Virus record (IMG/VR): IMGVR_UViG_3300017917_002434 | Coordinates: 186,001 to 250,000 of that record | Direction: 5' to 3' (one strand) | Length of the DNA: 64,000 nucleotides | Shown: in pieces, positions 2,060 through 55,345 of the stretch | Position numbering within the stretch: position 1 is the first letter of the stretch | Layout: each line of letters opens with the position of its first letter | The notes under the pieces: generated by a model | The model's input: only the letters and a program-made list of their open reading frames with translations | What the model was told of the DNA's origin: nothing | Database searches by the model: none | Position numbers and translations under genes: made by a program

Positions 2060-5000
2060 ATGGCAGAATATAAGATCAGTAGATTAAAGTTTACCTGGAA
2101 AGGTGACTGGCAACCTAATTTTAATTATATCGTCGACGATATTGTAAGATTTGGTGGTAAAAGTTATGTCTGTATTGAAAGACACACATCATCTACCCAG
2201 AGTTTTTATGCTGATTTAAATTTTATTGATCAGACTACGATACCGGCTTCACCCGATCCTCGATGGGAATTGATGTTCGATGGCTATGAGTGGCGAGGCG
2301 ACTGGACTCCGTTTACTGTTTACAATGTAGGCGATATAGTCAAATACAAATCTATCTCTTATATCTGTATCAGTTCACATACTTCTAACACAGTAACTAT
2401 TGGTCTAGAAGGCGACCAGACACATTGGGTTTCTTATGCTAGGTCAGATGACTGGAAAGGCGATTGGCAACCTTCTACCACATATTCTGTCAGAGATGTC
2501 GTAAAATATAACGGTATAGTATACAGAGCAGTAGCTAGAAATATTTCCAGCGATGTAACTACAGGTCTAGAAGGAAACTTTGCTGACTGGGAAATAGTAA
2601 ATCCAGCACAACAATGGAGACAGGCCTGGACAACAAATAGAAGATATAGAAAAAACGACATCGTCAAATACGGCGGTATAGTCTATAGATGTATTACTGG
2701 GCATACGTCAGCATTAACTGCCGCTGAAGGTTTAGAAGACGACCAAGCAGCTTGGGAAATAGTTTACAAAAATATAGAATACAAAGGCGACTGGGTACCG
2801 GCAGTAATAGCACCAGTTACCCCGGGCGTTAGATATAAACTAAACGATGTAGTAAAGTTTGGTGGTGGAATATGGATCTGCGTCGACTATCATACTAGTA
2901 CAACAGAATTTGACCTCACAAAATGGCAGGTGTATGTACCTGGCTTCGAATTTGAAAATGAGTGGAATACTAATACTGTCTATCAAAGAGGCGATGTTGT
3001 TAGATATGGGGGTTACTCTTATGAGGCTTTGAATAATAGCATAGGTCAGAATCCTGCTACTTCAGCACAACAAAACGACGATAGTTCTATAGCATTCTGG
3101 AAATTATTAAACATAGGCTTTAGGGTCAGCGGAGAGTGGGCTAACAACACAGCATATTTTGTCGGTGATGTTGTAAGACGCAACGGACAATTTTATGTTG
3201 CTATCAAAGATGTTTTAACAGATCCTAACATAGATACAGTTGGTTGGGAATTAGTAATTCCTGGAGAAAAATATAGAAAAGAATGGGAATTAGATGAAAC
3301 TTATGCTATAGGCGATATCGTAGTTTTTGAAGATAACACCTATAGATGTCTAGTTAAACACTTAGCTTCAAACATTAATCTAAGACCGGACAATGATTAC
3401 GATAATAATATATGGACATTGTTAATCAGAGGCGAGCCAACAAACAGTCTGAGATATCAAGGCGATATAAAATTCTATGGAGAAACTGATGACGGTAGTA
3501 CCGTAGGTCAGACTAGATTACCTATCGGAATAACAGGACAGACACTACGGGTAGTTAATAATGCTCCATCATGGGAAACATTTAATATAGCACAAAAAGT
3601 GTACTATGTGAGCACCGAAGGCTTTGACGATCCTGACAATGGCACTAGTTTGAACAGTGCTTTTAGAACAGTAAAGTATGCCTGCGATTTCGCCATTGGC
3701 CCGGCTACTATTTTTGTTAAAGCAGGAGTGTACTCCGAAATACTACCGATGAAAGTGCCGAGAGATGTTGCTATCGTAGGCGAAGAATTAAGAAGCACCA
3801 TAATTGAACCTGCTGTTGGGTATGAACTTTCAGACATGTTCTATGTTAACAACGGTTGTGGTATTAGGAATATGACGCTAAGAGGTTTAAATGGAACTCT
3901 TACAGCAATTAATCAATATGGAACCAGAAGACCAACAGCCGGTGCGTATGTGTCGTTAGATCCAGGATCAGGACCTACAGACAGCTCTGTTTGGATCACT
4001 ACAAAATCTTGCTATGTACAAAACGTAACAACTTTTGGTAATGGTTGTGTAGGATTAAAAGTTGACGGTGCTTTACATGGCGGCGGCAATAAATCCATAG
4101 TAGCTAACGATTTTACACAGATTCTTTCAGATGGCATCGGAGCATGGGTTACTAACAACGGTCTTTCAGAACTTGTTTCAGTATTCTCATACTACGGTCA
4201 CATGGGATACTTGGCAGAAAACGGAGGTAAGATTCGTGCTACCAACGGTAACAGCTCTTATGGAACATATGGCTGCGTGGCTGAAGGTGTTGACGAAACT
4301 GAAACTCCTGCCGAAGGGTTCATCAATAACAGAACTTCTGAAGCGGTTATAGCATCAGCATTCTCAGGCGAAGCTAATGATGAAATTTTAAATCTCGAAT
4401 TCAGCAATGCTGGTGAAAATTATACTTCGGCGACTATGAGTTTCGTAGGTTCAGGAGCAGGAGCATCAGTTATCGTTGATGAGTTCCGAGACGGGGGCAT
4501 CTTTGAATGGAGGTTATTAGATCCGTTGCCTGGAGGATTTTTAGGCGGTGGCGGATTTCAGTCTACAGGAAACAATGCCCAGGCCGGTGACACAACGGGG
4601 ATTAATATCGCTTCAAACGACGAAGCATTGCCCGGAGATTACATAGGTGCTAGAATCATTATTACCAGCGGAACCGGTACAGGACAATACGGAATAGTTG
4701 CTTCTTATGATATTGTAACTAAGAGAATAGACGTAGCTAACGAATATGACGGAGCAGCAGGATGGACGCATGTTATTCCTGGTTATCCTCTAGCTCCATT
4801 GTTAGATACTACTTCAGTATATAGGATTGAGCCACGACCAATCACTGCTGCTCCTCTATACACTAACGATTCAATACCCGGAGATATAAGATATTTTACA
4901 GACGCTATCTATATTAAAGAGATAGGTCGATTAGTAGCGACCGGTCGACCAGCCGATGGAAGTGTAGGATCTATCTATATAGGTACTGATGAAACTAATA

Positions 5001-7702
5001 TTACTATATCTAATGCTGCTAATAACCCAGAAATTTATACATCAGTAGCATGGGACGGAACCAGCAGAATTGCTGCTGTAACCAATGCTACTTCTGCTAT
5101 TGTCGGTACTTGGAATACGGGGTCATCATCATTTACTTTTAATTCTATCGTAACTAATATTGGAGTTAATAATTGTACTAACATAGCCGGTGGCGGCGGC
5201 TCATTTGTAGCTACAGCACCTTCAACAACTGGTTCTGTAGCAGTATATACCTCATCGTGGATTTTAAGATCGACACCAGTATCAGCACCCTGGACTGCTG
5301 TAGCTTATGGAAAAAATAGATTTGTTATAATTTCTACCACAGGAAAAACAGCTATTAGTACCAACTCGGGCGTAACATGGACAGCAGGCTCAGACATACC
5401 TGCGTTCGGTGATTCAACACAGCCACAATGGACTGATATGTGCTACGGAAACAATAGATTTGTAGCCATATCATCCAATACCAATGCTGTAGCCTATAGC
5501 TTTGATGGTCTAACGTGGTACTTGTCGGCTCTGCCTTTCGATACGAACTGGAGAAGAATCAGTTATGATCAGGGATTATTTGTAGCTATTAGTACTTCTT
5601 TAACACAATATGCTGCTGTTTCGGACAGCGGCGGCTTCGCTTGGGAATTAGTAACTTTAGACGGAGGATCTCTAGGTAGAGATGCTCTAGCATTTGTTCC
5701 TAATACTACTACTAGAGGTCGATGGGTTTTGTTGTCTGTAGATGCTGGGACTGTTGACACATTTCAGTACGGTGCTACATTCAGATGTAGACCGGTTATC
5801 ACAGGCGGTAGAATACAATCGATGAAAATATGGGAACCAGGCAGCGGCTATACCGGACAGCCCGTGTTCACGCTCAGCGATCCAGTATCAACATCAAACC
5901 CCCAATACGAATTTAGAATTGGTAACGGTGTCCTAGCTAATCCTACCTTTATTAATAGAGGTATTGGATATAAAACATCTACTACAAGAGTAACAGTAAG
6001 TGGTGACGGATATGCTGATATCTACGAACTCGGTGGAGATATCATAGTTGACGGAGTTCCTAGGGTTGTTAGAACTGGTGCTAACTTTGAAATTAATGCT
6101 ATTAACTGGGAACCATCAGTACTTCCCATCTCTGGACCGTGGGGCGGAGTTACTGCTGGTACAGATAAATTCGTAGGAATTACATTTCAAGGAGTCGGAA
6201 CAACGCAGATAGTGTATTCAGCAGACGGAGAAGGTTGGACCAGTGCTACGATTCCGCAGCAGCGAGATTGGAGAGATATAAGATTTGGCAACGGCGTCTA
6301 CATCGCAGTAGCCTATGGTACTGTGTTTGCTAGAAGCACTAACGGGACTACTTGGTCTACAGTAACAGTTCCTAATGCCAATTGGTCTTCTGTAGATTAT
6401 CTAAATGGAAAATGGGTAGCTATTTCTAACGGTTCGGCAAACGCTCTGTATTCTGAGGACAACGGCCTAACATGGCAGACATCTTCACTGCCGGTCAGTG
6501 CTCAATGGATCAAAGTTAAGCACGGAGCTAATAATTTCATCGCTATCTCTAACAACAATGATAAGGCAGCAATATCCGTAGATGGTCAAGCATGGCTACT
6601 AAGAACTTTGCCGACGACAGCCCAGTGGTCGGATGTTGCCTACGGAAATAATCATGTGATATTGATCGCAAGAAATAGCAATCAGATAGCACTTTCCGAG
6701 GACGATGGAAACTCTTGGGACGCAGCATCCGCACCTTCAACAGACGATTGGGCACATATTATATTCGCCAATAGAAAGTTTGTTTTATTTTCGGGTACCG
6801 GATCAAAAATTTATTCATCTAGATTAGGTCTATCGTGGCTAGAAAGAGATTATCCGTTAAGTAATCCAACGGCAGCAGTAGCAGGATTGAACAAATATCT
6901 AGTTTTATCTGACAATGATGCTGCTGTAGCTTCAGACGGATCAGATAACAAAGTTTACAGAGTGTTAACAGTACAGATTTTAAGTGGTTCTATAGGAAAT
7001 TACAGATTAGCTATCAGAGTGGGTCCTGATTTCAACAGAACAACTAGTCCGGAACATAATGCTCCCATAGAGATTCGCGAAAAATACAGTCAAGTTCGAT
7101 TAACTGGACACGATTTCTTAGAGATAGGTACTGGTAATTTTACCCAAACAAATTATCCTACTACTAATCTTATTAATCTAGCACCAGAAAATGAAGTGTA
7201 TAATCGAGGTGGCGGTCGTGTATTCTATACATCAACAGACCAAGACGGTAATTTCCGAGTTGGTGAACTGTTTGCTGTTGAACAGGCTACTGGCGTAGTT
7301 ACAATTAGTGCTGATTATTTCGACCTCGGTGGATTATCAGAATTGAGATTAGGTGGTATACGTGTGGGCGGAACAGGAGTTGTTATCAGAGAGTTTTCTA
7401 CAGATGTTACATTTGCTGCTGATTCTAACAATGTAGTGCCTACACAGAGAGCTATTAAGTCCTATATAGAAAGACGTATTTCAGGTGGTGGATCAGAAGC
7501 AGCTACAGGTACATTGATCGCAGGTACAGTTAGAATAGGAGGACCGAATAATATCGGTAGTACTACTAATACCTACGTAAATTTACCTAGAAATATGAAT
7601 ATGAGAAAAGGGGCCTCGGGTATGATGCTGGCTATGAGCATGTTTTCGGACGCTTTTAACAGTAATCTAGACGGGCAAGAAGTTGGTAGGGATTTAGGTT
7701 AA
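2060..7702 (+). CDS. Giant tail fibre/spike protein (1880 aa): 8 N-terminal CBM5/12-like repeats, beta-helix-like region, BNR/beta-propeller-like repeats
   Basis: Eight 'W.G.W.....Y...D(I/V)V.(Y/F)GG..Y.C' repeats; 'YYVS..G.D...G.....AFRTVKYA' beta-helix start; many 'S.DG..W......W..(I/V).YG...F(V/I)A' units; paralogue of 7745..13744. Confidence 0.75.
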   Translation: MAEYKISRLKFTWKGDWQPNFNYIVDDIVRFGGKSYVCIERHTSSTQSFYADLNFIDQTTIPASPDPRWELMFDGYEWRGDWTPFTVYNVGDIVKYKSISYICISSHTSNTVTIGLEGDQTHWVSYARSDDWKGDWQPSTTYSVRDVVKYNGIVYRAVARNISSDVTTGLEGNFADWEIVNPAQQWRQAWTTNRRYRKNDIVKYGGIVYRCITGHTSALTAAEGLEDDQAAWEIVYKNIEYKGDWVPAVIAPVTPGVRYKLNDVVKFGGGIWICVDYHTSTTEFDLTKWQVYVPGFEFENEWNTNTVYQRGDVVRYGGYSYEALNNSIGQNPATSAQQNDDSSIAFWKLLNIGFRVSGEWANNTAYFVGDVVRRNGQFYVAIKDVLTDPNIDTVGWELVIPGEKYRKEWELDETYAIGDIVVFEDNTYRCLVKHLASNINLRPDNDYDNNIWTLLIRGEPTNSLRYQGDIKFYGETDDGSTVGQTRLPIGITGQTLRVVNNAPSWETFNIAQKVYYVSTEGFDDPDNGTSLNSAFRTVKYACDFAIGPATIFVKAGVYSEILPMKVPRDVAIVGEELRSTIIEPAVGYELSDMFYVNNGCGIRNMTLRGLNGTLTAINQYGTRRPTAGAYVSLDPGSGPTDSSVWITTKSCYVQNVTTFGNGCVGLKVDGALHGGGNKSIVANDFTQILSDGIGAWVTNNGLSELVSVFSYYGHMGYLAENGGKIRATNGNSSYGTYGCVAEGVDETETPAEGFINNRTSEAVIASAFSGEANDEILNLEFSNAGENYTSATMSFVGSGAGASVIVDEFRDGGIFEWRLLDPLPGGFLGGGGFQSTGNNAQAGDTTGINIASNDEALPGDYIGARIIITSGTGTGQYGIVASYDIVTKRIDVANEYDGAAGWTHVIPGYPLAPLLDTTSVYRIEPRPITAAPLYTNDSIPGDIRYFTDAIYIKEIGRLVATGRPADGSVGSIYIGTDETNITISNAANNPEIYTSVAWDGTSRIAAVTNATSAIVGTWNTGSSSFTFNSIVTNIGVNNCTNIAGGGGSFVATAPSTTGSVAVYTSSWILRSTPVSAPWTAVAYGKNRFVIISTTGKTAISTNSGVTWTAGSDIPAFGDSTQPQWTDMCYGNNRFVAISSNTNAVAYSFDGLTWYLSALPFDTNWRRISYDQGLFVAISTSLTQYAAVSDSGGFAWELVTLDGGSLGRDALAFVPNTTTRGRWVLLSVDAGTVDTFQYGATFRCRPVITGGRIQSMKIWEPGSGYTGQPVFTLSDPVSTSNPQYEFRIGNGVLANPTFINRGIGYKTSTTRVTVSGDGYADIYELGGDIIVDGVPRVVRTGANFEINAINWEPSVLPISGPWGGVTAGTDKFVGITFQGVGTTQIVYSADGEGWTSATIPQQRDWRDIRFGNGVYIAVAYGTVFARSTNGTTWSTVTVPNANWSSVDYLNGKWVAISNGSANALYSEDNGLTWQTSSLPVSAQWIKVKHGANNFIAISNNNDKAAISVDGQAWLLRTLPTTAQWSDVAYGNNHVILIARNSNQIALSEDDGNSWDAASAPSTDDWAHIIFANRKFVLFSGTGSKIYSSRLGLSWLERDYPLSNPTAAVAGLNKYLVLSDNDAAVASDGSDNKVYRVLTVQILSGSIGNYRLAIRVGPDFNRTTSPEHNAPIEIREKYSQVRLTGHDFLEIGTGNFTQTNYPTTNLINLAPENEVYNRGGGRVFYTSTDQDGNFRVGELFAVEQATGVVTISADYFDLGGLSELRLGGIRVGGTGVVIREFSTDVTFAADSNNVVPTQRAIKSYIERRISGGGSEAATGTLIAGTVRIGGPNNIGSTTNTYVNLPRNMNMRKGASGMMLAMSMFSDAFNSNLDGQEVGRDLG

Positions 7703-7744: not shown

Positions 7745-10700
7745 ATGGCAGAGTTTAAATTAGGTAGAATTAGGTTTATATGGAAAGGCGAATGGGCCGC
7801 GGGTACCTCTTACCTTAAAGATGACGTAGTCAGAGTAAACGGTAAAGTTTATATCTGCGTTATCGGACATACGGCAGATTCAAATTTTTATGTAGATGCG
7901 AATAATGTTCCCGCACGTTGGAATCAAGCCAGCGATGGCCAATCTTGGAGAGGTGACTGGACTGTTGACACTGAATATTTTGTCAACGATATCGTTAAAT
8001 ATGGCGGACAGTTATACATCTGTTTAGTAGGACACACATCGTCTGCTAACATCAACGACGGATTAGAAGTTGATCTAGATCTTGGCGACAGTACACAGAC
8101 TAAGTGGGATCAATTTGCCGAAGGTTTTGATTGGAAAGGCGACTGGACTACCAGCACCAGATACAAATTAAACGACATAGTCAAATACGGCGGCAATACA
8201 TATCTATGTAATCTAGGACATATCTCTGCTCCTACCGCAGCCATGGGATTAGAAGGTCTAGATAGAGTAACATCAGGACAAAAAGCAGACATTGACAAAT
8301 GGGATCAGTTCTCTGAAGCATTTGACTGGAAAGGTCCATGGACACCATCTACTCGATATAAAATCAATGATGTAGTTTCCTTCGGCGGAACTACTTATGT
8401 ATGTAATGAAGGACATCCTGCTGCTGCGACATTCGCCTTAGGTCTTGAAGCAGATCAGGGTAAGTGGGATTATTTTAATCAAGGTATTGAATATCTCGGT
8501 GCTTGGGACGCAGACGCACAAAATTATAAAGTAAACGATCTAGTTAAAAACGGCAACGGCGTTTATATCTGTTTACAAAAGCATACTTCAAGCCTCTCAA
8601 GAACCTTCGAACAAGATGAAGATTCTGGTTATTGGGCACAATTCTTAGAAGGATTACAATTTGAAGATAGTTGGAACACGTCTACTATCTATCAACCTGG
8701 CGACATAGTTACCTATGGTGGGTATGCTTATGTTGCCACAACTAACCACAGTAACATCAAACCTACACAGGCAGTAACCGGAGCCCAGAACTGGGATCTA
8801 TTCACCACAGCATTTAAATTCCAACAAGACTGGTCAGGAGTCACCGCATATAAAGTCGGCGATGTTGTAAGGCTCAGCGGATATACCTATGTAGCTATCG
8901 CAGATAATACTAATTTCAAACCACCTAATCTAACATATTGGGAACAATTAAATCCTGGTATACGCTGGTTAGGTGCTTGGGCCAATGGTTACGGATATGT
9001 GTTAGGTGACGCTGTACGTTACGGACCTAACAGTTATATCTGCGTTCTAGCACACACATCTGCTACAGCAACAAATAGACCGGATGTAGACATCTCAGGA
9101 ACATTTTGGAATCTATTAGCTAACGGTCAAGAATCGTCCGTGTTAACAACACAAGGCGATATCGTTTACTACGGTGGTGCCGGGCCTACAAGATTACCTA
9201 TAGGTTCAGACGGACAGGTTCTTGTCGTTAACAATGCTGCAGCACCCGAATGGAAATATTGGGGTGAAGTAGATCAACTCTATTATGTGAGCTTAGAAGG
9301 TACAGACGAGCCAGCACCTACATACGGTATTACATTAGACAAACCATGGAGAACCGTAAGATACGCTGCTGACCAGATAGAAAAAGGCACTAGAAATCCA
9401 GAAGCTGCCTATCTGCTAGAAATTAATAGACAATTTGTACAGCGTGAAACAGTTCAGTGGATTAACTATCAGATTACCAACAACATCGCTCCTTTTGTTT
9501 CGAGTTTTTCTTATAATACAACCAAGTGTGAGCGTGATGTTGGATTAATCATTGACGCTTTATTATGGGATATCCGCCACGGCGGTAACGTAAGATCTAG
9601 ACAGGCTGCTGTTGAATACGTAACAAACGCCTCAACATTCTACGGTCTAGGACAAAAAGAAGAAACAGTAGCAGCGATTAATTATGCTGTTGATACATTG
9701 ATCAATACCTGTGTACTACTTAACACAGCACCGGCAACAAATTATCAAGTCACTAACAGCGTTCCAGTCAATGACAGAATCTTACAGATTATCAATACAA
9801 ATTATGTTGCTGAAGATTCATCCTTTACAGAAATTACTAATCTAAAAACACTAATCAACACAGCTATATCGGGCGGTGCGTTAGTGAATGTAGGAGCTGA
9901 AGTAAAACCTCAGAGAACTATATTAGTTAAGACTGGTGTATTCTTTGAAACACTACCAATCATTGTGCCTGTAGATACTGCGGTTGTTGGCGACGAATTA
10001 AGATCTACTAATATCAGACCGGCTACTAGCCAGATCGATCCAACAGATGTTCCTAAAAGTGTTGCTGCTCTAGTATGGTTAGCAAGCGTTCTAGAGGCGG
10101 TTGTTACAGGAGTTACATTTAGTAAAACTACCACAGGGTCAAATCCAAATACACTAACACAGAGTCAAACGAAACCATTCGCTGACAGCTCAGTGGGTAA
10201 TGTTGTGAATTTGGTAGTGCAGAATGCTTACACTTACATTACGGACACTCTGATAATAGGCGGCCCATCAGGTATTACGTTTGTAGGAACAAACACTCCG
10301 GTTAGTGATTATGATACTTACGCAGCAGTAAGACAACTAGAACTTAACAGAGAATTTATCGTAGCAGAAATTCATGCTTATATTGCTGATACATATCCCG
10401 CATACACATATTCTTTAGCGGCTTGTGCTCGAGATATTAATGAATATATAGATGCGGCAAAATATGATTTAATTTATCCTGGCAATTATAGAACGTTAAC
10501 AGCAGCAAAATGGTATGTTAACGGCGTTACTGGTTCAGTAACTGAAAACATGTTCCTAGTTCGAAACAGCACAGGCGTTAGAAATATGACTGTCCAAGGC
10601 CTAACAGGAACACTAACTGGACCAAATTCTTATGGTACATATAGACCAACAGCTGGTGCTTATGTTTCTTTAGATCCAGGCTGGGGCCCTAACGATCAGC

Positions 10701-13700
10701 GTGTTTGGATTACTACAAGATCGTGTTATGTACAGAACGTAACTACATTCGGTACTGCCTGTATTGGTGCTAAGATCGATGGTGATCTACATGCCGGCGG
10801 TAATAAATCTATCGTTGCCAACGACTTTACACAGGTCCTCTCAGACGGAATCGGTGTATGGTGTACTAATCTCGGAAGAACAGAACTTGTTTCTGTATTC
10901 TCATACTACGGACATATTGGTTATCTAGCAGAAGACGGCGGTAAGATACGTGCTACTAACGGTAACAGCTCCTACGGTACATTTGGTTGTGTTGCTGAAG
11001 GCGTTGATGCTACAGAAACACCTATCACAGGCATAGTCAATAACAGATACGAAGAAGCACTGATTACTAAGGTTTTAACTAATACACAACAAGTCCTTCG
11101 TGTTGAATATCAAAATGCTGGTATTGATTATACCGCAGGTACATTTACATTCAACGGTCCAGGTACGTCATTTACCACAGTCGGTGATGAAAGAAGAGAC
11201 GGCGGAATTTTTGAAGTAAGACTGTTAGATAATGATGACAGTTCCGGACAATTTGGAGGACTTGACTATCTAAGTTCAGAAAACGTAGCACAGGCAGGTA
11301 CAACTACATCGATCACCTTAGCCGCTACAGACGACCAAACCAGTACTGCCTATATCGGTATGCGTATCTATATTCAATCAGGTGCTGGCGTAGGACAATA
11401 CGGGTATATTAATACCTATAACGCAGGATCTAAAGTAGCTGGCGTGTTTAAAGAATCAACAGGTACCGCAGGTTGGGACCATGTCGTACCAGGAACTACA
11501 ATAGTATCTCCTGATCCTTCATCATTGTATATAATCGAACCAAGAGTTACAGTAGCAGCACCGACAGAAAGTTCACCTGCTGTTACAGGTGGTCCCGCAG
11601 GCGGATCCTCAGATGCGGTCTATGCTAACGTAAGACAGACATTTACAGGTCTGTCAGCATCGGGCGGATCAGGAACTGGAGCAACATTTAACGTAACTAG
11701 AAGCGGTGAAACTTATACTGTTACATTAAATCAAGCAGGACAAAATTATACGAACGGAAATACCTTAACTATTCTTGGCACAGCGGTAGGCGGTGCTACA
11801 CCAGCCAACGATATCAGGATCAAAGTAGAAACTGTTGATTCTACTCCCGGATTGGTTGTAGGAGAAATATTAACATTTAGACACGAAGGCAAAGGACGCG
11901 GCGGTAATTTCGTACTGCTTCCAGTCGCATCTAGCAACGTCGGTTATTTTTCTACCAACGGTACAAGTTGGTCAACATCTACATTGCCAGCGACTGCTGT
12001 TTGGACATCTTTAGCAACAGGCGATATTAGCAATGTATCATATGTGGTAGCACTGGGTTCTACAGGAACTACAACTGCTGCTTATAGTATTGATGGTGGA
12101 GCAACATGGACCGGATCAAACTTACCCCAGACTAGTGCTGTAACTTCTGTAGCTTTTGGCGGGGGTAGATTTGTTGCCGTAAGATCAGATTCTGCTACGC
12201 CCTTAGTATCTACAAATGGTACTACATGGGCTAACGGTGCTAATCCTCTCCCAGGAGCAACTAATTGGCAGAGTATTACCTACGGAAAAGGTAGATTCTT
12301 TGCTGTGGCCACAGGCGGTACAGCATCTGCTTACAGCCTAGATGGAATTACCTGGACTGCTGCCGCACTACCATCATCGTCAACATGGAACAGCATAGCA
12401 TTTGGAAATAATATATTTGTAGCATTATCTGTAGCAGGTGTGCTGGCTATAAGCAATAACGGGACCAGCTGGACCGCAGTTTCCGGAACCATAACCGCTG
12501 ACGAAGTTGGATACGGACAAGGAACATTTGTTGCTACCAGCAATGGTACCGCAGCAGCACACTGGGATTCACAAGACGGATTGACTTGGACTCAAGGAAC
12601 TGCGACATTTGCTGCCACAGGAAGACCGGTATTTGGTAATCCTAATAGATCTCCATTGTGGGTGATTCCTCTCTCAGCTGCTACTCCTCAAGCACTAGTT
12701 ACAGGTACTAGAGCCTATGTACGTTGTAGAATCGCTGATACTAAGATAGTAGAATTCAGGGTAGTTGAGCCAGGTAGCGGTTACAGTTCTGTAACACCGC
12801 CGACATTGACTATTACAGATCCTAACAATACCTACGAAGCACCGTATACTGTGCGTGTCGGTAACGGTGTATTAGCTAATCCAACATTTGTTACCAGGGG
12901 TGCCGATTGGGAAGTCGCTACAGGAACCGTAGTCGGTGACGGTTACGCAGATATTTTCCAGAATGGCAATTACGTAGACGTCAGAGATCTGTATTCTATA
13001 CCAGTACCAGGTTCAAACGTTGAATTTTCAACATTGCCTGGACAGTTTTACAAACTGGTTACTGTGACACAGTTACTAGGTACAGGGCCTTACACAGCTA
13101 GATTACAGGTAAGTCCTCCGATAGAGATTCCTGAAGCTATGCCGCACGAGGATACTTTTGAAATTAGGATCCGTTATTCACAGGTTCGACTAACTGGTCA
13201 TGATTTCTTAGATATAGGAACAGGCAATTTTACCAGCACTAACTATCCAAATTTACCTTTAATAGATCCGATACCCGCCAACGAAACAGTAGAAAGCAAC
13301 GGCGGTCGTGTGTTCTATACATCAACTGACCAAGATGGCAACTTCCGAGTTGGTGGGTTGTTTACAGTTGAACAAAGTACGGGTACTGCTACACTGAACG
13401 CAGATGCGTTTAATATCGCAGGCCTACAAGAGCTCAGTTTGGGCTCGGTAGAATTGGGCACAGGGGGTGCTACAATCACTGAATTCTCAACGGATCCGTT
13501 CTTTACACAGAATTCAGATTCAGTTATACCTACGCAGAGAGCTATTAAAGCCTACATCAGTTCACAAATTGGTTCAGGCTCTAGTACGTTGAACGTAAAT
13601 ACTCTCACAGCAGGTCAGATATTTGTAGCTAATGACTTCATTACTACTACCACAGGGGGCAGAATCAACGTTCTAGCTCCGATGAATTTCATAGGTGGTA

Positions 13701-14455: not shown

Positions 14456-15424
14456 ATGCCTACATCATTTAGAAATTTAGTACAGATCAAAGGAGATGCT
14501 GTTTACGCTACAGAAGAACATCTAGAGCGTGGCAGGATCTGGGTCTATACTCCAGGCAATAACTATACCAACTACCAGATATGTTGGCGTGCTCCGGCGA
14601 GAGGTACTGCCGTTATAGAAATATGGGGTGCCGGAGGATCCGGTGCTCGTATGTGCTGCTGCGGGGGCGGACTTCCTGGTAACGCAGGTGCTTATGCGAA
14701 AAGAACTATCAGAGTAGAACCAAATTGTTATATCTGCGGAGCAGTAGGATTTAGCTGCGGTAACGCAGATGCTATCTGTTTTAGAGGCTGCTCAGATCCA
14801 ACTGGTGTAACATGGACAGGTAACTGCGGTGCTTCGGGCTGTATGTGTGCCCAAGGTGGTGCCGGCGGACGTTCATTCTGTACTACAGGCACATCACTTT
14901 ATTGTTGTTTCGCAGCTAACGGCTATTGTGCTCGTGGACCGTACAATGATAACTGTGGTACGATCTGTAACTACTTTGGTGGAATATGGATCGCCTGTGC
15001 CTATGGCGGAGACATCAATCGCTGCGGCGGATTTAGTTGTACAGCATTTTTAGGCTGTCAAGGTCCTTGTATCTGTTCATATACATACCACGTAGCAACA
15101 CCACCGGGATATGTTTCCAAGTGCGGCGGAGTCGTAGTATTTGGAACAGAAAACAATAACGAATTTTCAAACTGGTCAGGGCAAGGTGCCCACCAGCATC
15201 AATCAGCACTGAACGCACAGTCTCGACAACCAACACACGGCGTCCCATGGTCGTATTGCTGGGGATTTGGTGGAGGCTGCGGCTGTTACGAGAACGAAGG
15301 ATGCTATCCTAGCGTTGGACCTGGATATCCAGGTACACCACCGAATCCGTGTCCTGAAGTCAGAGATCACGGACGCCGGGGCGGTCACGGTGCTATCAGA
15401 ATTAGATTTATAGAGGGACAATAA
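14456..15424 (+). CDS. Cys/Gly-rich fibre-associated protein, paralogue 1 (322 aa, 30 Cys)
   Basis: Gly-rich phage tail domain frame 'IEIWGAGGSG...GN.GAY.K.TI' ... 'GG.GAIRIRF' with a CCC motif; Cys counted by hand. Confidence 0.65.
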   Translation: MPTSFRNLVQIKGDAVYATEEHLERGRIWVYTPGNNYTNYQICWRAPARGTAVIEIWGAGGSGARMCCCGGGLPGNAGAYAKRTIRVEPNCYICGAVGFSCGNADAICFRGCSDPTGVTWTGNCGASGCMCAQGGAGGRSFCTTGTSLYCCFAANGYCARGPYNDNCGTICNYFGGIWIACAYGGDINRCGGFSCTAFLGCQGPCICSYTYHVATPPGYVSKCGGVVVFGTENNNEFSNWSGQGAHQHQSALNAQSRQPTHGVPWSYCWGFGGGCGCYENEGCYPSVGPGYPGTPPNPCPEVRDHGRRGGHGAIRIRFIEGQ

Positions 15425-15425
15425 G

Positions 15426-16421: not shown

Positions 16422-16432
16422 GAGATAATATA

Positions 16433-23150: not shown

Positions 23151-26100
23151 ATGGCAAAGAGAAAAATAGACAATTATACATTTAGACCGGGTATCAGTTA
23201 CCTGGGAAATCTGTATCCAGATGAATGGCAGAGCTTTTCTGATAACGTGCCGTTTATCAAAGCAGAACTAACAGCCTATTTAAACTATAGGATAGACATC
23301 GACACTGAGGTAAATCTGTATCCAAATGCTGTCCGTATTTTAGAAAACAATATTAATTTTATCAAAGAAGAAGCGACTGCTTGGATAGCTACACAGGTAG
23401 CAGGTAACTTTCCTGGATTTGTAGGTTATACTTACGATTCAGCCAAATGTAAAAGAGACATTGGATTTGTTTTAACCGCTTATATCCATGATGTTAGATA
23501 CGGAGGTAATGAAGACACTAGAACCATAGTCGGAAAATACTGGATCAACAATGAGCCACAGGTCGATGGGGATCGTCAGGCTGAGGTTAAAACTCACGAG
23601 TTTATCAGAGATCTTATAACAGATTACATTTTGCCTCTAGCTTCGTACACACCATTACAGCTTATCGCAACTAGATACACAACAGGACCAGCAGCCGAGG
23701 CCAACGCAGCAGCCCGTATAGATACCCTTTCAGCAATCACGACCACAGTAATCGCTAATGGCTTATCGTCGATGCCAGCGATATCTTATAAATCTGCTCC
23801 ATACGAAAATTATACATTTAATTCTGAAAAATGTCAGAGAGATCTTGGCTACGTACTAGATGCTTACTTACATGACTTGCGTTATGGCGGAAACGAACAG
23901 ACTCGACTCACGATACAAAAATACTACGACAACGGAGTACTACAAGTCGACGGCAGCGGCCAAGCTGAAGTTGAAGGTCATGAATTTGTAAGAGATCTTA
24001 TTATTAATAATATCATGCAGAATGAAGCCGGTACGATATTGTATCCTGAAGCTGTGAGATTATTAACGCTGAACAAGGCCTATTTACAAAATGAAATCTT
24101 AGGATGGATCGCTAATGAAGTCACTGAAGCTACTAAATGCGAAAGAGATATTGGATATCTTATCGATGGAGCACAATATGACATAGTACTAGGCACAAAT
24201 TACAATGCTTTATTTTTAGGCTTAGCAGAATTCAACTCTTTAGATAATGATTTTTTCGTTATCGACACTATACAAAGAACTAAAACAGCCATAGCAGCTC
24301 TACCTAATGTTGCTGCGAGTACCGCAGCAGTGGCTAGAAATAATGCTTTCTTCAATGAAGTAGTTGACATAATCCAGAATGGTAGAGGAAGTGCTAATGA
24401 ATTAGTGTTAGCCGAACCAAGTAATGCTACAGTCAGTAGGATCGCAGCTAAAAATCAACTTGTAGCCAATAAAAATTTCTTAGCCGCAGAAGTTAATGCG
24501 TGGGTAGCAGAGCAATATCCTACAGCTGATCATGATCCTGTAAAATGTTCTAGAGACGTTAAGTATGCTATCGATGCCTTATGCTACGATATCTTATATG
24601 GCGGAAACTCGGCTACTTACGATCAGGCTAGATTTTTCTTTTACGGTTTCTCTAGCGGAGCTCCAGGCATTGATCCTACTCATAGATTACAAACTGTAGC
24701 TGCCTATGTACATCTAAAACAAGTTATCGGTCAAGTGGTACAGAATCAAACGGTTACTAAGACCACAGGCAATACCTTAACACAGAATCAAACATTTCCA
24801 GCAGCCAGTTCGTCGGATGCTATTATCTGTCAAAATCTAGTACAGATCACAGCAGATGTTGTAGCAGCGACAACACAAACACAGGCAAATACGATTTTAT
24901 CCGGTATTGTAAGATCAGTTCCTAGCATCACATTCGCGACTTCTGCTTTACAGACAGCTTTTAATGCGATAACAACAGCTAAAACATCTGTGATAAATTC
25001 TGTTGTTGTTTTCAAAGGATATACCTATGATTCTGCCAAGTGTATCAGAGATTCTGGCTTTGTCATAGATGCCCTAATCTATGACTTAGAAAATAACGGT
25101 AACGAAGAATCAAGACGAATAGCCCAGAAATACTATATAGATGGAGTTTTTCAAGTTGACGGATCCCGTATTCCTGAAATAGCCAGCTATAGATTTTTAC
25201 AAGAAACGATCAAGAATTATATTTTTCCAAGAGTAAATGCTCCTGATTATCAGATTGTATATCCTCAGATATTAACAGCACCATCTGCTGAAGTAGGTGC
25301 CTACGCAAGAATTACTGAACTAACAGATGTGTTTATTAATTTTCTAAAAGATGGTCCTAGTAGTTTACCAGCACTGTCTCAGAGAACTGTTCCTTATCAA
25401 ACAGTAGAACAGCAGGTAGTTGACACTACCAAAGCCTACGATCCTGATGCTGGCACAGCTATTTTAGCACTTTCAAATGCTCTAGTTAACATCATAGAAC
25501 AAGGTCTCGGAGCATTGCCTGTTAAAGAAAGTGCTGGATATGGTTTGATCAAATTTCAGGGTGTTGTAAGATTAGAAGACCTTTTACTAATCACAAATAC
25601 TACAAAAAATGTAGTTATCTATAATTTCTCTAGCAATACTGCTGGCGGCGAAATTGTGCCAGAGTTTGACGGCGATGACGATTTCATAGCGTTCAAACAG
25701 GTTACAGATCGAGTTATTCATCTACGATTAAATGTTGATACATCGACTATGGATGAAACTGACGAGCTACAGATATTTGCTGAAGCCCCGGAAATGAAAG
25801 TTCGTCCGTACGATTTTGGTACAGATGCTATCGAACGTCATAGAGTTGCTTCGCCTCAGTCAATGCTTGACGCTGACTTCGAATATGGTCTACAACCAAC
25901 TAAGTGGCAGGCTATTGGTATCGCCAGAGGTTATCCATCAGTGTATGAAGTACCAGGATCAGATTTTGAAGTTGTGTCTATAACAACCGATGCGTCATTT
26001 CCTAACAACGGTGTAGGTGCTTCGACTATAACTGTAACCACAGCAGCACCGCACGGATTATCAGCTGGTACACCGGTTACAGTGGCTGGTCTTGACACAG

Positions 26101-29100
26101 CGATCTCTGGTATCAGTAGAGCAGAGGGAGCGTTTGTCTTAGTAACTATCCCGACTCCTACTACATTTACATATTTTGCCAAGTCTAGAGTAGGTACTAC
26201 CTCAGGAACCAGTTTAAAAACTACCTATACTCAGATTAGAAAAGGCGGATTTTACACAGGGGCATCCATAGGTTTACCGACTATCAACTTGTTATCTAAC
26301 GGGACATCGGGAACTTTTGTAACACAATTTGATACTCCGGCTGCGACATCTCGAATAGCTATCGCCAGCGGTAATATTCCAAGCGTAGGATCACCTATGA
26401 ATGCCGCAGTAGGTATCGGGTTTGGTTCTCAGGTCACTGCCGTAGTCGGTGCTGGGGGTGTCGTAGTGACTCCCACTGTGTTAGGGGACTATGCTCCAAC
26501 ACTATTAGGTCTTACTACTCTTACCGTAGCTAGTACCAGCGGTATAGTGATTGGTTTAGGTGCCAATGATCAGACTGGATCGTCGACGTTCGTTGAATCT
26601 ATAGTAGGAACTAATGTAACATTTACTAGACCTTTTTCCGGTGCTGTGATAGGAAATACCACTACCTATACAGAATTAACCGGAACCAACGAAATATCTA
26701 TCGGTTCAGCAGCAACATTCAATGTCGTTGGTAGCTCGGCAGGTTACATTTCTGTAGCCGTTAATTCAGGAGGCAGCGATTATCAAGTAGGAGATGTATT
26801 AAGAATAGTAGGAACTGATCTTACAGGAACAACGCCAGCTAACGATCTATTGATCAAAGTAGCTACAGTATCCGGTGGTGCTATTTTAACTGCCGACGTT
26901 ATTTCTGGAACTAGTGTAATGTCGTCACCTAACGAAACTATTAGCGGCATTAATAATAGTTCTTATACTGCTACTAGTCCAGACAGTACCATAGGTTCTG
27001 GAGCTACTTTTGACGTAACTAGAAACGGCACAGCTTTTACATCAGTAATCAATGCCGGTGGTACTGGATACGTCAAGGGAACAGAGTTTCTAATCTTAGG
27101 AACTGTATTTACAAATAACACTACTCCGGCTAACGATGTAGAAATCACAGTTACCCAGACCACAGCAACATTTACTGGTCTATTACAAGATGCGACTACA
27201 CTATCTGGTAGCTCGGCACAATTTAGTATAACTAGGATCGGTGCTACCTATACCAGTTTGGTAGTTTCATTCGCTGGTAGCGGTTATGCCCTAGGAGAGA
27301 TCGTTACGATCTACGGAACCCAACTAGGGGGCAACAATCCTTCAAACGATCTTCAGATCCAGGTTGACAACGTAGGCGGGGGCGGTGAAATTATCGCAGC
27401 GTCGCTGGTCAGCGGACTTGTAGCTAATGAAGATGCTCCTGGTGTAATTTCTCAGATATCTACCGCAGGTACAGGTGATAATAGAACAACTATTAATAAT
27501 GTCCCAGTTCTAATAGTTCCAGGATCAGGAATTAACTGTGAATTTTCTATAACTAGAACCGCCAGCGGTTATACAAACGTAGTAGTAACAGATGGAGGCA
27601 CTGCCTACCTACCAGGAAATAGAATTAGGATCCTAGGCAGCGACCTTGGGGGAGCAAACACAACTAATGATGCTATTGTTTCAGTGACTTCTGTTGACTC
27701 TATCACCGGAGCAATTACCGCAGCTACAGTAACTGGAACTGGTGTAGCAGGTATCAATTTACAGTTATATTCATCTGTGACTCTCAGCGAATTTACTACA
27801 GCTACTATAGCTTCGAGTACCAGCCTAGGCTTTGGTACCCTAGCGACTTTACAGATAATTTTTCAAGAGCCGCATGGTATACCACCCGGGGGATCATTTA
27901 TCGTTACTGTGAGTTCAGACAACGGATCTAACAATCATGCGTTAGCCAATGGATCTTTCTCTGCTACTCAGATACCTACAAGAAACACTATTACTTTCCA
28001 GGCTAGATCTCCGGGCGTTATCACAGGAGCACCTATTACCGGAGTCGTATACCCAAGACCGGACAGTTTCTTCACACATAGACCGTTTGACGGCGGTGTA
28101 CAACTAGGTACTGGCGGTCCACAACACGGTGTACAGGCTATACGACAGAGTAAAAAATATATTCGTTATCAATCTGGTAAAGGTGTAATGTATACAACGG
28201 GTGCTCTGTTTGCTCCAAGTTATGATGTATTGTCTATATTGGCAACAGATGTCGAAGTTGGAGCTACCATAGAAATCACCTTAGGTGATAATGATCACGG
28301 GTTACAGCGTGGTGCTGTGATTAGACTCAGCGGAGTCTTAACTGGAGGTTACGATGGCGATTATGAAGTAGATGAAATCGTCAGCGAACGTACATTTAGA
28401 ATAATCGCTACGAAGCGTGTAGGTTCTAGAAAACCGTCATTGAGCTTCAGCTGTCAAATTTCTACACTACGTTGGAAGGGTGCGGTAGTACGTGCCGGAG
28501 TGTTTGATGATCAAAATGGAATATTCTGGGAATATGACGGACAGACATTATGGGCCGTTCAGCGTACTTCTACTAAACAATTAGCAGGTACGATCTCAGT
28601 TAACGCTGGCTCAAACAGGATCACAGGACTGAACAGTAGATTTAGAGATCAATTAAAAGCCGGTGACGCTGTTACTATCAGAGGTATGACACACATCGTA
28701 ACTCACGTCGACAGCCAAACTTCGATGACTGTTAACCCAGATTATCGCGGCGTCAGCAATGTGTCAAACGCTAAGATGAGTTTAATTTCAGAAGTACGTG
28801 TACAACAACGAGATTTCAACAAAGATAGATTAGACGGAACAGGTCCTAGCGGATACGATCTAGATATTACCAAGATGCAGATGATCGGAATCCAATATTC
28901 ATGGTACGGTGCTGGTTTTATTGACTTCATGTTGCGAGGATCTGATGGAAATTATGTGTTCGCCCATAGAATGAGAAATTCGAATATCAATACCGAAGCT
29001 TATATGAGAACAGGTAACTTGCCTGTGAGATATGAAGTTTCAAACTACGGTGCGACCAGCAGATTAGTTGGAGACATTGGAAACACATCTACAGAGTTAA

Positions 29101-52173: not shown

Positions 52174-52180
52174 AGCGACA

Positions 52181-52200
52181 GGAGGGGGTAATTCCCCTCC
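52181..52200 (+). terminator. GC-rich stem-loop between gp32 and uvsX
   Basis: ggaggggg-taat-tcccctcc; weak U tract. Confidence 0.55.
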
Positions 52201-52228
52201 ATTCCATTTCTGTGAGGATTGAATAATA

Positions 52229-54634: not shown

Positions 54635-54655
54635 CTTAAATCCGTTTTAAAACGT

Positions 54656-54673
54656 TATTTAGTTAGATAAATA
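54656..54673. promoter_or_regulatory. Divergent late promoter pair
   Basis: TATTTA 54656-54661 (minus) and TAAATA 54668-54673 (plus). Confidence 0.65.
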
Positions 54674-54694
54674 CTCAGTTAATTAGAGGTTAGA

Positions 54695-55342: not shown

Positions 55343-55345
55343 AGT

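What the first reader, a model, noticed from the sequence alone, without database searches (positions are those of the whole stretch)
9386..10532. The same CxRD domain is inserted twice into one fibre paralogue and absent from the other
Seen: in the 1880-aa protein 'RTVKYA-CDFAIGP-ATIFVKAG...GEELRSTIIEPA-VGYELS-DMFYV' is contiguous, while the 1999-aa paralogue has roughly 170-180 aa inserts at both points (about 9386-9910 and 10025-10530), each holding one motif (KCERDVGLIIDALLWDIRHGGN at 9527; ACARDINEYIDAAKYDLIYPGN at 10424). Inference: the domain is a self-contained mobile module that plugs into surface loops of unrelated virion proteins (7 copies in 2 proteins here).
Basis: seen in the sequence. 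Interest (0 to 1): 0.62.

Follow-up and report, generated by a model that had tools for sequence, protein, structure and literature searches.

The report
Phycobiliprotein-like modules inside phage fibre proteins
The helical domain inserted twice into one giant tail-fibre-like protein of this freshwater jumbo phage is a relative of cyanobacterial light-harvesting phycobiliproteins that still has their pigment-attachment site, which gives a testable lead on why some cyanophages bind their hosts only in the light.

Summary
The 1999-aa protein (7745-13744) has two inserts, aa 544-722 (nt 9374-9910) and aa 761-930 (nt 10025-10534). Its 1880-aa paralogue (2060-7702) has only 4 and 2 residues at those points. 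Each insert holds one CxRD module, homologous over 70-166 aa (E 1e-7 to 4e-16) to five N-terminal modules of the 2693-aa protein.

A profile of 61 copies hits C-phycocyanin alpha chains in the PDB (E 1.6e-5), with its Cys on the bilin-attachment Cys84. AlphaFold models (pLDDT 92.6) match only phycobiliproteins at the top (Z 12.5-14.6). Across 2276 copies, Cys is kept in 96%, Arg in 94% and Asp in 99%.

Insert 2 is a circular permutant, joined to the scaffold at the F-G loop. In relatives it grows into arrays of up to 7 motifs.

All four combinations of filled and empty sites occur among 240 homologues, but changes are rare and old. The module is modular rather than actively mobile.

Among cultured phages it occurs only in cyanophages. 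It is present in S-PM2, P-HM1 and P-HM2, which need light to adsorb, and absent from P-SSM2 and P-SSP7, which do not.

Bilin binding is inferred, not shown.

The parts
2060..7702 (+). Insert-free paralogue P0001 (1880 aa): N-terminal CBM_5_12 repeats, a cap motif, a beta-rich core, and C-terminal repeats that gave only sub-threshold beta-propeller Pfam hits
   Evidence: CBM_5_12 E 7e-48; phrog_9851 'tail fiber protein' E 2e-201; no module found
3689..3820 (+). The two empty sites in P0001: aa 544-547 (FAIG, site 1) and aa 586-587 (VG, site 2), flanking the conserved 38-aa segment
7745..13744 (+). Insert-bearing paralogue P0002 (1999 aa), about 40% identical to P0001 outside the inserts
   Evidence: phrog_9851 E 5e-207
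9374..9910 (+). Insert 1 (aa 544-722): phycobiliprotein-like globin-fold module in native helix order (A/B-E-F-G-H), with Cys 52 aa from its start
   Evidence: pLDDT 92.6; phycobiliproteins Z 12.5-14.6
9527..9538 (+). Cys595-Glu-Arg-Asp of insert 1, equivalent to Cys84-x-Arg86-Asp87 of phycobiliproteins
9911..10024 (+). Scaffold segment between the inserts (aa 723-760), four predicted short beta-strands, conserved in both paralogues
10025..10534 (+). Insert 2 (aa 761-930): the same module circularly permuted (G-H, linker, A/B-E-F), joined to the scaffold at the F-G loop. This is the site that expands into tandem arrays in relatives
   Evidence: (aa 4-168 colinear with P0003 507-666, E 4e-13)
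10424..10435 (+). Cys894-Ala-Arg-Asp of insert 2
23151..31232 (+). P0003 (2693 aa), a virion structural protein unrelated to the fibre paralogues outside the modules
   Evidence: (phrog_5838 E 1e-235)
23283..25370 (+). N-terminal tandem array of five modules in P0003 (Cys at aa 100, 228, 330, 466 and 631; nt 23448, 23832, 24138, 24546 and 25041)

Best explanation
SHOWN
- The 'CxRD domain' is an all-helical module of about 130-180 aa with the globin-like fold of phycobiliproteins (PBPs). It lacks their N-terminal X-Y hairpin.
- It keeps the PBP chromophore site: Lys-Cys-x-Arg-Asp-x-Gly-Tyr at the start of helix E.
- In P0002 one copy sits in native order between the cap helix and the first beta-strands of the beta-rich core (site 1). 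A second, circularly permuted copy sits one 38-aa rung later (site 2).
- Site 2 is a permissive spot. In relatives it holds 1 to 7 or more motifs, and in one clade an unrelated beta-rich insert.
- Every site-2 array starts with a G-H half-module and ends with an A/B-E-F half-module.
- The paralogue pair is old and syntenic in related freshwater jumbo phages.

INFERRED
- The native N and C termini of the module lie close together, which would allow both loop insertion and permutation.
- The two end halves of a site-2 array fold together and bring the array's ends back to the scaffold.
- Arrays grew by tandem duplication.
- Rare switches of site state arose by recombination between the adjacent paralogues.

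MOST LIKELY FUNCTION (inferred, not shown)
The near-universal retention of Cys, Arg and Asp at only about 25% overall identity suggests the module still binds a linear tetrapyrrole. The bilin would be attached through the Cys in the infected cyanobacterial cell, either by host lyases or autocatalytically as in ApcE (from my own knowledge). This would put chromophores on fibre and baseplate proteins. A light-triggered change in these modules could be what makes adsorption of some cyanomyoviruses light-dependent.

My estimates: homology to PBPs about 0.85-0.9; bilin binding about 0.45; a role in light-gated adsorption about 0.2.
For: Identity of the module:
- A profile of 61 copies against PDB sequences gave 35 hits, 34 of them phycobiliproteins. 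The best is CpcA 8iml_A at E 1.6e-5. The module Cys aligns with the bilin Cys, and the preceding helix aligns with PBP helix B.
- Pfam PF00502 passes its gathering cut-off in homologue P0116 (25.1 against 22.2 bits, profile positions 66-129). It is the only Pfam family hit repeatedly by single copies (5 of 61).
- The AF2 model of insert 1 has pLDDT 92.6. All 50 top Foldseek PDB hits are PBPs, with TM 0.41-0.6.
- In a VIA search of 48,161 chains the top 8 are PBPs, including the ApcE bilin domain (Z 10.5-12.5). Other globins follow at Z 6-10.
- In the larger model the match reaches Z 14.6 over 137 aa at rmsd 2.7.

Conservation: in 2276 HMM-detected copies Cys is 96%, Arg+2 94% and Asp+3 99%.

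Permutation and arrays.

Modularity.

Synteny.

Link to cyanophages:
- tblastn hits among 50,697 phage records are all to cyanophages, apart from one record whose name begins 'Marine'.
- The four nearest cultured jumbo phages, all on heterotrophic hosts, have none.
- S-PM2 has 9 copies; P-HM1 and P-HM2 have 4 each; P-SSM2 and P-SSP7 have 0.
- According to PMC6628666, P-HM1 and P-HM2 do not adsorb in the dark while P-SSM2 and P-SSP7 do. S-PM2 adsorption needs light but not host photosynthesis.
- cpeT lies 1.4-1.8 kb upstream of the module-bearing giant gene in S-PM2 and S-RIM32.
Against: - No chromophore has been observed, and the structure models carry no ligand.
- The window's own copies do not reach Pfam's PF00502 threshold. 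The best copy in the genome scores 14.4 bits.
- The 270-kb record (76% complete) has no bilin reductase, haem oxygenase, CpeT, CpeS or HEAT_PBS lyase, no psbA and no hli. Its host is unknown, and its core genes resemble PA5oct-like phages of heterotrophs.
- P-SSM2 is known to carry bilin-synthesis genes (PMC2984593) yet has no module.
- The module has its own near-invariant residues (Asp+14 99%, Asp+9 79%, Asn+20 82%, Tyr-5 83%). By my recollection of phycobiliprotein sequences these are not PBP features. They may point to a structural salt-bridge network or to different chemistry.
- Some clades replace Cys with Thr, Tyr or Ala.
- The match with light-dependent adsorption rests on about four independent phages.
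- For helical folds, Z of 12-14 alone can reflect a common arrangement (tool note).
Confidence: 0.45

Rival explanations
1. Pigment-free structural module. The fold came from a phycobiliprotein but no longer binds pigment. It serves as a rigid spacer, strut or decoration on fibres and baseplates, as Ig-like domains do on other phages. Cys, Arg and Asp are kept because they take part in an internal polar network with the module-specific Asp+9, Asp+14, Asn+20 and Tyr-5.
For: - The module-specific invariant residues, absent from phycobiliproteins as I recall their sequences, lie on the same helix.
- There are up to 37 copies in one protein, which is typical of structural repeats.
- This genome has no bilin or lyase genes.
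- Site 2 also accepts an unrelated beta-rich insert, so whatever sits there is dispensable for the scaffold.
- I know of no report of coloured virions (own knowledge), and nothing turned up in the literature.
Against: A single unpaired Cys kept in 96% of 2276 copies at about 25% identity is hard to explain by packing alone. When it is lost it is replaced by dissimilar residues (Phe, Thr, Tyr, Ser). The conserved block K-C-x-R-D-x-G-Y is exactly the PBP chromophore site.
Confidence: 0.33
2. The module binds something other than a bilin through the conserved Cys/Arg/Asp face. Candidates are a host surface component (making it a receptor-binding module), a metal ion, or another cofactor.
For: The module sits in proteins annotated as tail fibre or baseplate. 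It has extra invariant acidic residues. Globin folds bind varied ligands: the next-best structural matches are haem sensors, RsbR, and the photocobilins, which by my recollection bind bilin and B12.
Against: Sequence similarity is specifically to PBPs rather than to other globin families. No other ligand-binding motif was recognised in Pfam or NCBIfam.
Confidence: 0.12
3. The resemblance to phycobiliproteins is convergent or generic. On this view it is an unrelated helical bundle in which a CxRD motif arose independently.
For: - Foldseek E-values are modest (0.05-0.7).
- Helical folds often give Z around 13 (tool notes).
- The sequence match covers only the front half of the module.
- The window's copies miss Pfam's threshold.
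Against: Three independent lines agree:
- Profile to PDB sequence: E 1.6e-5, with 34 of 35 hits being PBPs.
- Pfam's gathering threshold is passed in one homologue.
- The structural rankings are filled with PBPs covering the whole domain, 145 aligned residues at rmsd 3.3.

The shared positions also go beyond CxRD: K-1, G+5, Y+6, Y+13, G+18 and G+19.
Confidence: 0.07
4. On direction only: both inserts are ancestral to the fibre family, and P0001-type proteins lost them cleanly. On this view nothing was 'inserted' into P0002.
For: On the midpoint-rooted FastTree of the insert-free core, the insert-free clade (n=120, support 100) is nested within insert-bearing lineages. Site 1 is nearly constant in size, about 175 aa, in all bearers.
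Against: The root is not fixed by an outgroup. Rooting on the long branch to the insert-free clade makes the two groups reciprocal sisters. The cyanophage profile phrog_9851 runs straight across site 1, as in P0001. Lineages with only site 2 or only site 1 filled are nested inside the insert-free clade, which looks like later gains.
Confidence: 0.4

Closest known systems
Phycobiliprotein alpha/beta subunits (Pfam PF00502; C-phycocyanin CpcA, phycoerythrin, allophycocyanin)
   Same: Globin-like helix arrangement over the whole module (Z 12.5-14.6). The profile-level sequence match puts the module Cys on bilin Cys84, with Lys-1, Arg+2, Asp+3, Gly+5 and Tyr+6 shared, and helix B aligned.
   Different: - No X-Y hairpin: the alignment starts near PBP residue 31.
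- It is not a free subunit of about 17 kDa but a module inside proteins of 1,000-6,400 aa, in 1 to 37 copies.
- It has its own invariant Asp+14, Asp+9 and Asn+20.
- It also occurs circularly permuted.
- It is found in phage virion proteins, not in phycobilisomes.
- No chromophore has been shown.
Bilin-binding (PB) domain of the phycobilisome core-membrane linker ApcE
   Same: A PBP-type domain embedded in a large multidomain polypeptide. It is among the top structural matches (4xxi_A Z 11.7, and the ApcE chains 7eyd_19, 7sc7_BD and 9wg7_N2 at Z 10.7-11.6). ApcE attaches its bilin without a lyase (own knowledge), which is a precedent for lyase-free loading.
   Different: ApcE has one PB domain followed by linker repeats and belongs to the host antenna. 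Here the modules are repeated and sit in fibre or baseplate proteins. No sequence-level hit to ApcE was obtained.
Giant virion proteins of T4-like cyanomyoviruses (P-HM2 gp7 'baseplate wedge', S-PM2 and S-RIM32 'short tail fiber protein'; phrog_4527, 5342, 701, 18802, 3442)
   Same: They carry the same module: S-PM2 has 9 copies and P-HM1 and P-HM2 have 4 each.
   Different: Different scaffolds and a different phage lineage. The window's core genes are PA5oct-like, not T4-like. In the records I looked at, the module is not annotated.
Accessory Ig-like, FN3 and BIG2 domains on phage structural proteins
   Same: It behaves like them: a self-contained module found in variable copy number in otherwise unrelated virion proteins, gained and lost among close relatives.
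   Different: An all-alpha globin fold rather than a beta-sandwich. It carries a conserved cofactor-type site. It is inserted in loops and can be permuted.
Non-haem globin-fold sensor domains (photocobilin bilin/B12 photoreceptors, globin-coupled sensors, RsbR N-domain)
   Same: They are the next-best structural matches (Z 8-10.4; Atlas TM 0.54 to a B12-binding/GGDEF cluster). By my recollection, photocobilins show that a bilin-binding globin fold can act as a light sensor.
   Different: No sequence similarity was detected, and no output domain is attached here.

Membership tests
Phycobiliprotein family (PF00502, globin-like clan) | Globin-like all-alpha fold (helices A, B, E, F, G, H) | tested here: met
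   AF2 model of insert 1: pLDDT 92.6, six main helices. All 50 top Foldseek hits are PBPs. VIA gives Z 12.5 (145 aa, rmsd 3.3) and up to 14.6.
Phycobiliprotein family (PF00502, globin-like clan) | Significant match to the family's sequence profile (Pfam gathering score 22.2 bits) | tested here: inconclusive
   The window copies give no hit even at E<=10. The best copy in the genome scores 14.4 bits. Homologue P0116 passes with 25.1 bits. Five of 61 copies hit at E<=1. A profile of 61 copies hits CpcA chains at E 1.6e-5.
Phycobiliprotein family (PF00502, globin-like clan) | Cys84-x-Arg86-Asp87 chromophore site at the start of helix E | tested here: met
   The HMM alignment puts the module Cys on the CpcA bilin Cys. 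Cys is 96%, Arg 94% and Asp 99% in 2276 copies. All 7 window copies have C-x-R-D.
Phycobiliprotein family (PF00502, globin-like clan) | N-terminal X-Y helix hairpin that builds the alpha-beta monomer | tested here: not met
   Structural alignments of the single module start at PBP residues 30-50. The module has no equivalent N-terminal hairpin.
Phycobiliprotein family (PF00502, globin-like clan) | Covalently bound linear tetrapyrrole | not testable with these tools
   This needs spectroscopy or mass spectrometry of virions or of recombinant modules.
Phycobiliprotein family (PF00502, globin-like clan) | Assembly into (alpha-beta)3 discs and phycobilisome rods | not testable with these tools
   Unlikely, given the missing X-Y hairpin and the location inside fibre proteins. 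Not tested.
Right-handed beta-helix fibre or tailspike scaffold (DUF1565-type N-terminal cap) | Cap motif (YYVS..G.D...G......T...A) followed by parallel beta-helix rungs | tested here: inconclusive
   The cap motif and short strands are present in both paralogues, and homologue P0130 has a precomputed PF07602 hit. However, model residues 505-622 have pLDDT below 50, and there is no Pfam or PDB sequence hit for the core.
Actively mobile genetic element (intein, homing-endonuclease cassette, transposon-borne domain) | DNA-level signatures: flanking repeats, an endonuclease, or recent near-identical copies | tested here: not met
   There is only a 14-nt chance repeat at the borders. Copies within the window are 20-40% identical. 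Site states change 2-5 times over 240 proteins.

The most novel reading that the evidence does not exclude
These modules are working chromophore domains. They would be loaded with a bilin on the conserved Cys inside the infected cyanobacterium and so turn fibre and baseplate proteins into virion-borne light sensors. A light-driven change in the bilin-globin modules would release or activate the fibres, so the phage adsorbs only when the host is photosynthesising. That would explain the light-dependent, photosynthesis-independent adsorption of S-PM2, P-HM1 and P-HM2. It would also give cyanophage bilin genes (cpeT, pebS, pcyA, ho1) a substrate of the phage's own.
Probability: 0.2. Interest if true: 0.95.

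Novelty: new variant of a known kind. Interest (0 to 1): 0.8.

Why it matters
Phycobiliproteins are known as antenna subunits of cyanobacteria, red algae and cryptophytes. A large, unannotated branch of that fold inside phage fibre and baseplate proteins would be a new setting for it. The branch has at least 1,623 cluster representatives among 1.84 billion proteins, with up to 37 copies per protein, and the pigment-attachment site is intact.

It also turns two open questions into bench experiments:
- What makes adsorption of some cyanomyoviruses depend on light but not on host photosynthesis? PMC6628666 suggests a light-sensitive host receptor and/or phage tail fibres.
- Why do phages of Prochlorococcus, which lacks standard phycobilisomes, carry bilin-synthesis genes? 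PMC2984593 calls this unclear.

Even if the modules carry no pigment, two things remain useful. The natural circular permutation at a loop-insertion site, and the way arrays appear to be closed by two half-modules, are an instructive case of domain grafting. The module profile also gives an annotation for thousands of giant 'hypothetical' virion proteins.

Tried and rejected
- Direct Pfam and NCBIfam scans of the three proteins and of single window copies found only CBM_5_12, with no family for the module.
- Single-sequence phmmer against the PDB found nothing. Only the 61-copy profile worked.
- Megablast of the gene against phage genomes found no match.
- The ESM Atlas search by language-model features gave no usable hit. 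The Atlas search by shape gave only a photocobilin-like cluster at TM 0.54.
- An HMM of the back half of insert 1 (helices G-H) gave no significant match in the other copies. The permutation therefore rests on three things: the match of the insert-2 N-terminus to P0003 507-565 (E 1e-8), the colinear 166-aa alignment, and the geometry across the family.
- Single-sequence phmmer could not map the ends of site-2 arrays, because it picked internal modules. I replaced it with distances from the Cys positions.
- There are no meaningful direct or inverted repeats at the insert borders.
- Bilin reductase, haem oxygenase, CpeT, CpeS, HEAT_PBS, psbA/psbD and hli were all absent from the 270-kb record, which is 76% complete.
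- Host inference from bacterial genomes gave only two loci, on 335-kb and 153-kb contigs of a Neomarinimicrobiota MAG. These are probably mis-binned phage contigs.
- Cluster names of NCBI-sourced homologues all read 'hypothetical protein'.
- Literature searches for a phycobiliprotein-like domain in phages found nothing. Jia et al. 2010 is not held in the library.
- I did not use read laying or complex prediction. No claim here depends on them.
Full report
**Setting.** The window is positions 186001-250000 of a 269,730-bp linear IMG/VR virus record that CheckV rates 76% complete. It covers the structural region of a large myovirus. The tail sheath is at 39654-43013 and the large terminase at 47386-48972. 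For both, the nearest cultured relatives are PA5oct-, Atu_ph07-, Phosso- and SCTP-2-like jumbo phages at 45-53% identity, except SCTP-2's sheath at about 33%. The sequence comes from a pond metagenome, and close relatives occur in freshwater metagenomes from 12 studies. There is no near-identical phage genome in GenBank.

**Checking the observation.** P0001 (2060-7702, 1880 aa) and P0002 (7745-13744, 1999 aa) are paralogues, about 40% identical, with 7-8 CBM_5_12 repeats at the N-terminus. Both match phrog_9851 'tail fiber protein' at E about 1e-200.
- The alignment shows two clean inserts in P0002: aa 544-722 (nt 9374-9910) and aa 761-930 (nt 10025-10534). P0001 has 4 and 2 residues at those points.
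- Each insert has one C-x-R-D, at nt 9527 and 10424. P0003 has five and P0001 has none.
- The similarity goes well beyond the motif. BLASTP alignments of 70-166 aa give E 2e-7 to 4e-16, and an HMM of the front half of insert 1 finds all seven copies.
- Across the whole record there are 11 copies in three proteins. The third is a 2841-aa protein at record positions 51943-60468.

**What the module is.** Pfam, NCBIfam and single-sequence PDB searches were blank. A model of P0002 aa 495-1116, built on 48 homologues, showed both inserts as confident all-helical domains with pLDDT above 90. Its best PDB matches were phycobiliproteins. I then tested this in four ways.
1. A profile of 61 diverse module copies searched against all PDB sequences returned 35 hits, 34 of them phycobiliproteins. 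The best was CpcA 8iml_A at E 1.6e-5, and 16 distinct sequences scored below 0.01. The alignment places the module Cys on the phycocyanobilin-binding Cys. Lys-1, Arg+2, Asp+3, Gly+5 and Tyr+6 are identical, and the preceding helix aligns with PBP helix B.
2. Pfam's Phycobilisome family (PF00502) passes its curated threshold in homologue P0116 (25.1 against 22.2 bits). It is the only family hit by more than two single copies (5 of 61).
3. Insert 1 modelled alone (72 sequences) gave pLDDT 92.6 and pTM 0.88. All 50 top Foldseek hits are phycobiliproteins.
4. An exhaustive VIA search of 48,161 chains ranks eight phycobiliproteins first. These include phycoerythrin beta (Z 12.5, 145 aa, rmsd 3.3), a far-red allophycocyanin (Z 12.5) and the ApcE bilin-binding domain (Z 11.7). 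Other globin-fold proteins follow at Z 6-10. In the larger model, Z reaches 14.6.

The alignments start near PBP residue 31, so the X-Y hairpin that builds the alpha-beta monomer is missing.

CxRD is, from established knowledge of phycobiliproteins, the Cys84-x-Arg86-Asp87 site. There the Cys forms the thioether to the bilin, Asp87 bonds the pyrrole nitrogens and Arg86 binds a propionate.

In a census that did not pre-select on the motif (2276 HMM hits in 423 proteins), Cys is kept in 96% of copies, Arg in 94% and Asp in 99%. The module also has its own near-invariant Asp+14 (99%), Asn+20 (82%), Tyr-5 (83%) and Asp+9 (79%).

**Anatomy of the two inserts.** Insert 1 has the native helix order (A/B, E with the Cys, F, G, H). 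The Cys is 52 aa from its start and 125 aa from its end, and this holds in 118 homologues.

Insert 2 is in a different register. Its first helix aligns with the segment that follows the fourth module of P0003 (46% identity over 63 aa, E 1e-8). The whole insert is colinear with P0003 507-666, which runs from the back half of one module into the front half of the next. Its Cys lies about 132 aa from the start and exactly 37 aa from the end in all 46 single-copy cases. The lengths add up as a circular permutation cut in the F-G loop:
- 85 aa (helix G to the end) plus 51 aa (start to Cys) is about 136 aa.
- 37 aa corresponds to helices E and F.

I infer that the module's native termini lie close together. 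That would explain why it tolerates both loop insertion and permutation. I could not check this in 3D, because the tools do not return model coordinates.

**Variation among relatives.** The two paralogue families are large, with more than 3,400 and more than 4,100 hits. I classified 240 proteins by three conserved anchor segments.

| Site 1 | Site 2 | Proteins |
|---|---|---|
| empty | empty | 107 |
| filled | one module | 48 |
| filled | array | 72 |
| empty | filled | 9 |
| filled | empty | 4 |

- Site 1 is nearly constant, at about 175 aa with one module.
- Site 2 ranges from 160 to 1,561 aa with up to 7 motifs.
- Site-2 arrays still begin about 132 aa before their first Cys, and most end 37-57 aa after the last one. 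This suggests the two end halves form one module that closes the loop.
- One clade carries an unrelated beta-rich 169-aa insert at site 2. Another has Thr in place of Cys at site 1.

On a FastTree of the insert-free core, the site-1 state changes twice, site-2 presence five times and the site-2 size class 17 times. The insert-free proteins form one clade (n=120, support 100). Under a midpoint root that clade is nested among insert-bearing forms, so the direction of change is open.

The adjacent pair of insert-free and insert-bearing genes, and the downstream genes up to the P0003 homologue, are syntenic in a 363,943-bp contig whose insert-bearing protein P0013 is 69% identical to P0002 over the searched region. 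Many other contigs seem to carry both paralogues. There are no DNA repeats at the insert borders.

The module is therefore a modular, evolutionarily shuffled unit. It is not an active mobile element.

**Distribution.**
- In 1.84 billion cluster representatives the profile finds 1,623 proteins at E<=1e-3 and 693 at E<=1e-30. One 6,382-aa protein has 37 copies.
- Among 50,697 cultured-phage records, tblastn with either insert hits only Synechococcus or Prochlorococcus phages and 'Cyanophage' records, plus one record whose name begins 'Marine' (159 and 69 records). The hits lie in genes annotated gp7 baseplate wedge, short tail fibre or structural protein.
- By profile, S-PM2 has 9 copies in two giant ORFs and P-HM1 and P-HM2 have 4 each. 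P-SSM2, P-SSP7 and the four nearest jumbo phages of heterotrophs have none.
- The window's phage shares other accessory genes with cyanomyoviruses. The gene at 18151-19092 has 23 of its 24 phage hits in cyanophage or marine-sample records, at about 52% identity. Its homologue in a related contig carries a Glyco_transf_9 Pfam hit.
- The 270 kb available contain no psbA, hli, bilin-synthesis or lyase genes. The host is unknown. A freshwater cyanobacterium is plausible but not shown.

**How it most likely works.** The following are shown:
- a PBP-type globin module with the chromophore triad;
- two graft points at the start of the beta-rich core;
- a permuted second copy;
- expansion at site 2.

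The function is inferred. The conservation pattern argues that the Cys/Arg/Asp site is still used, and the simplest use is the ancestral one, binding a bilin. Virions assemble in a cytoplasm rich in bilins and lyases, and the ApcE domain shows that a PBP fold can load itself (own knowledge).

Published work supplies a phenotype waiting for a mechanism. P-HM1 and P-HM2 do not adsorb in the dark, whereas P-SSM2 and P-SSP7 do. [quoted passage not shown] Module presence matches that phenotype in all five phages. These are only about four independent cases, so this is a lead and not a result.

In S-PM2 and S-RIM32 the cpeT gene lies 1.4-1.8 kb upstream of the module-bearing giant gene. This could simply be conserved synteny.

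Several points count against the idea. P-SSM2 has bilin genes but no modules. This genome has no bilin genes. The module-specific acidic residues could instead form a structural network.

My estimates are: homology about 0.85-0.9, bilin binding about 0.45, light gating about 0.2.

**Novelty.** Six full-text searches for any description of a phycobiliprotein-like domain in phage proteins found nothing, and reading one candidate preprint for such terms also found nothing. The module is unannotated in the isolate records I inspected. I file it as a new variant of a known kind: the phycobiliprotein/globin fold in a new setting, with a natural circular permutant.

Noticed in passing
outside the window: record positions 51943-60468 (+) of the same 269,730-bp virus record: A third giant protein (2841 aa) carries four more modules, with Cys at aa 784, 927, 1176 and 1320. 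It has a similar 'YVSPRGID...TIQKA' cap motif near aa 210, so the same kind of graft may recur on another scaffold.
   Followed up: partly
homologues P0206, P0214, P0235, P0237 (site 2): At exactly the site-2 position these insert-free-clade proteins carry an unrelated, beta-rich insert of 169 aa with no CxRD. The site accepts different cargo.
   Followed up: partly
window 14456-17401 (+): Three consecutive paralogous genes (322, 331 and 378 aa; all phrog_4205, function unknown) follow the fibre pair. The same trio of 320-332 aa is present in the syntenic 363,943-bp contig. The third ORF as listed overlaps the second by 157 nt, so its start is probably later.
   Followed up: no
window 18151-20897 (+): A gene whose homologue in a related contig has a Glyco_transf_9 Pfam hit (phrog_8954, E 2e-136) and a Nol-like carbamoyltransferase sit inside the virion-gene block. 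The former's phage homologues are almost only in cyanomyoviruses (about 52% identity), unlike the PA5oct-like core genes.
   Followed up: partly
L002 (S-PM2 NC_006820, 165928-177267) and L013 (S-RIM32 NC_031235): cpeT (annotated 'CpeT-like antenna protein') lies 1.4-1.8 kb upstream of the module-bearing giant 'short tail fiber' gene in two cyanomyovirus genera, in the block gp5 - small ORFs - cpeT - tRNAs - 2OG-Fe(II) oxygenase - giant gene.
   Followed up: partly
L002 (S-PM2 NC_006820, record 168556-170625): The RefSeq record places 15 tRNA features inside the coordinates of the 3792-aa open frame, which has no stops and holds module matches at 169063-169410 and 169894-170271. The tRNA coordinates look misplaced.
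   Followed up: no
window 2060-3500 and 7745-9200 (+); C-terminal halves of both paralogues: Both fibre paralogues start with 7-8 CBM_5_12 carbohydrate-binding repeats. Further on they carry repeats that gave only sub-threshold Pfam hits to beta-propeller families. P0001 appears to have an extra block of these around aa 1350-1640 that P0002 lacks.
   Followed up: no
L006 and L007 (PBPT01000016.1, 335,231 bp; PBPT01000082.1, 153,204 bp): Two large contigs binned into a 'Candidatus Neomarinimicrobiota' MAG from the Red Sea encode insert-1-type modules (31-32% identity). They are probably jumbo-phage contigs binned by mistake.
   Followed up: no
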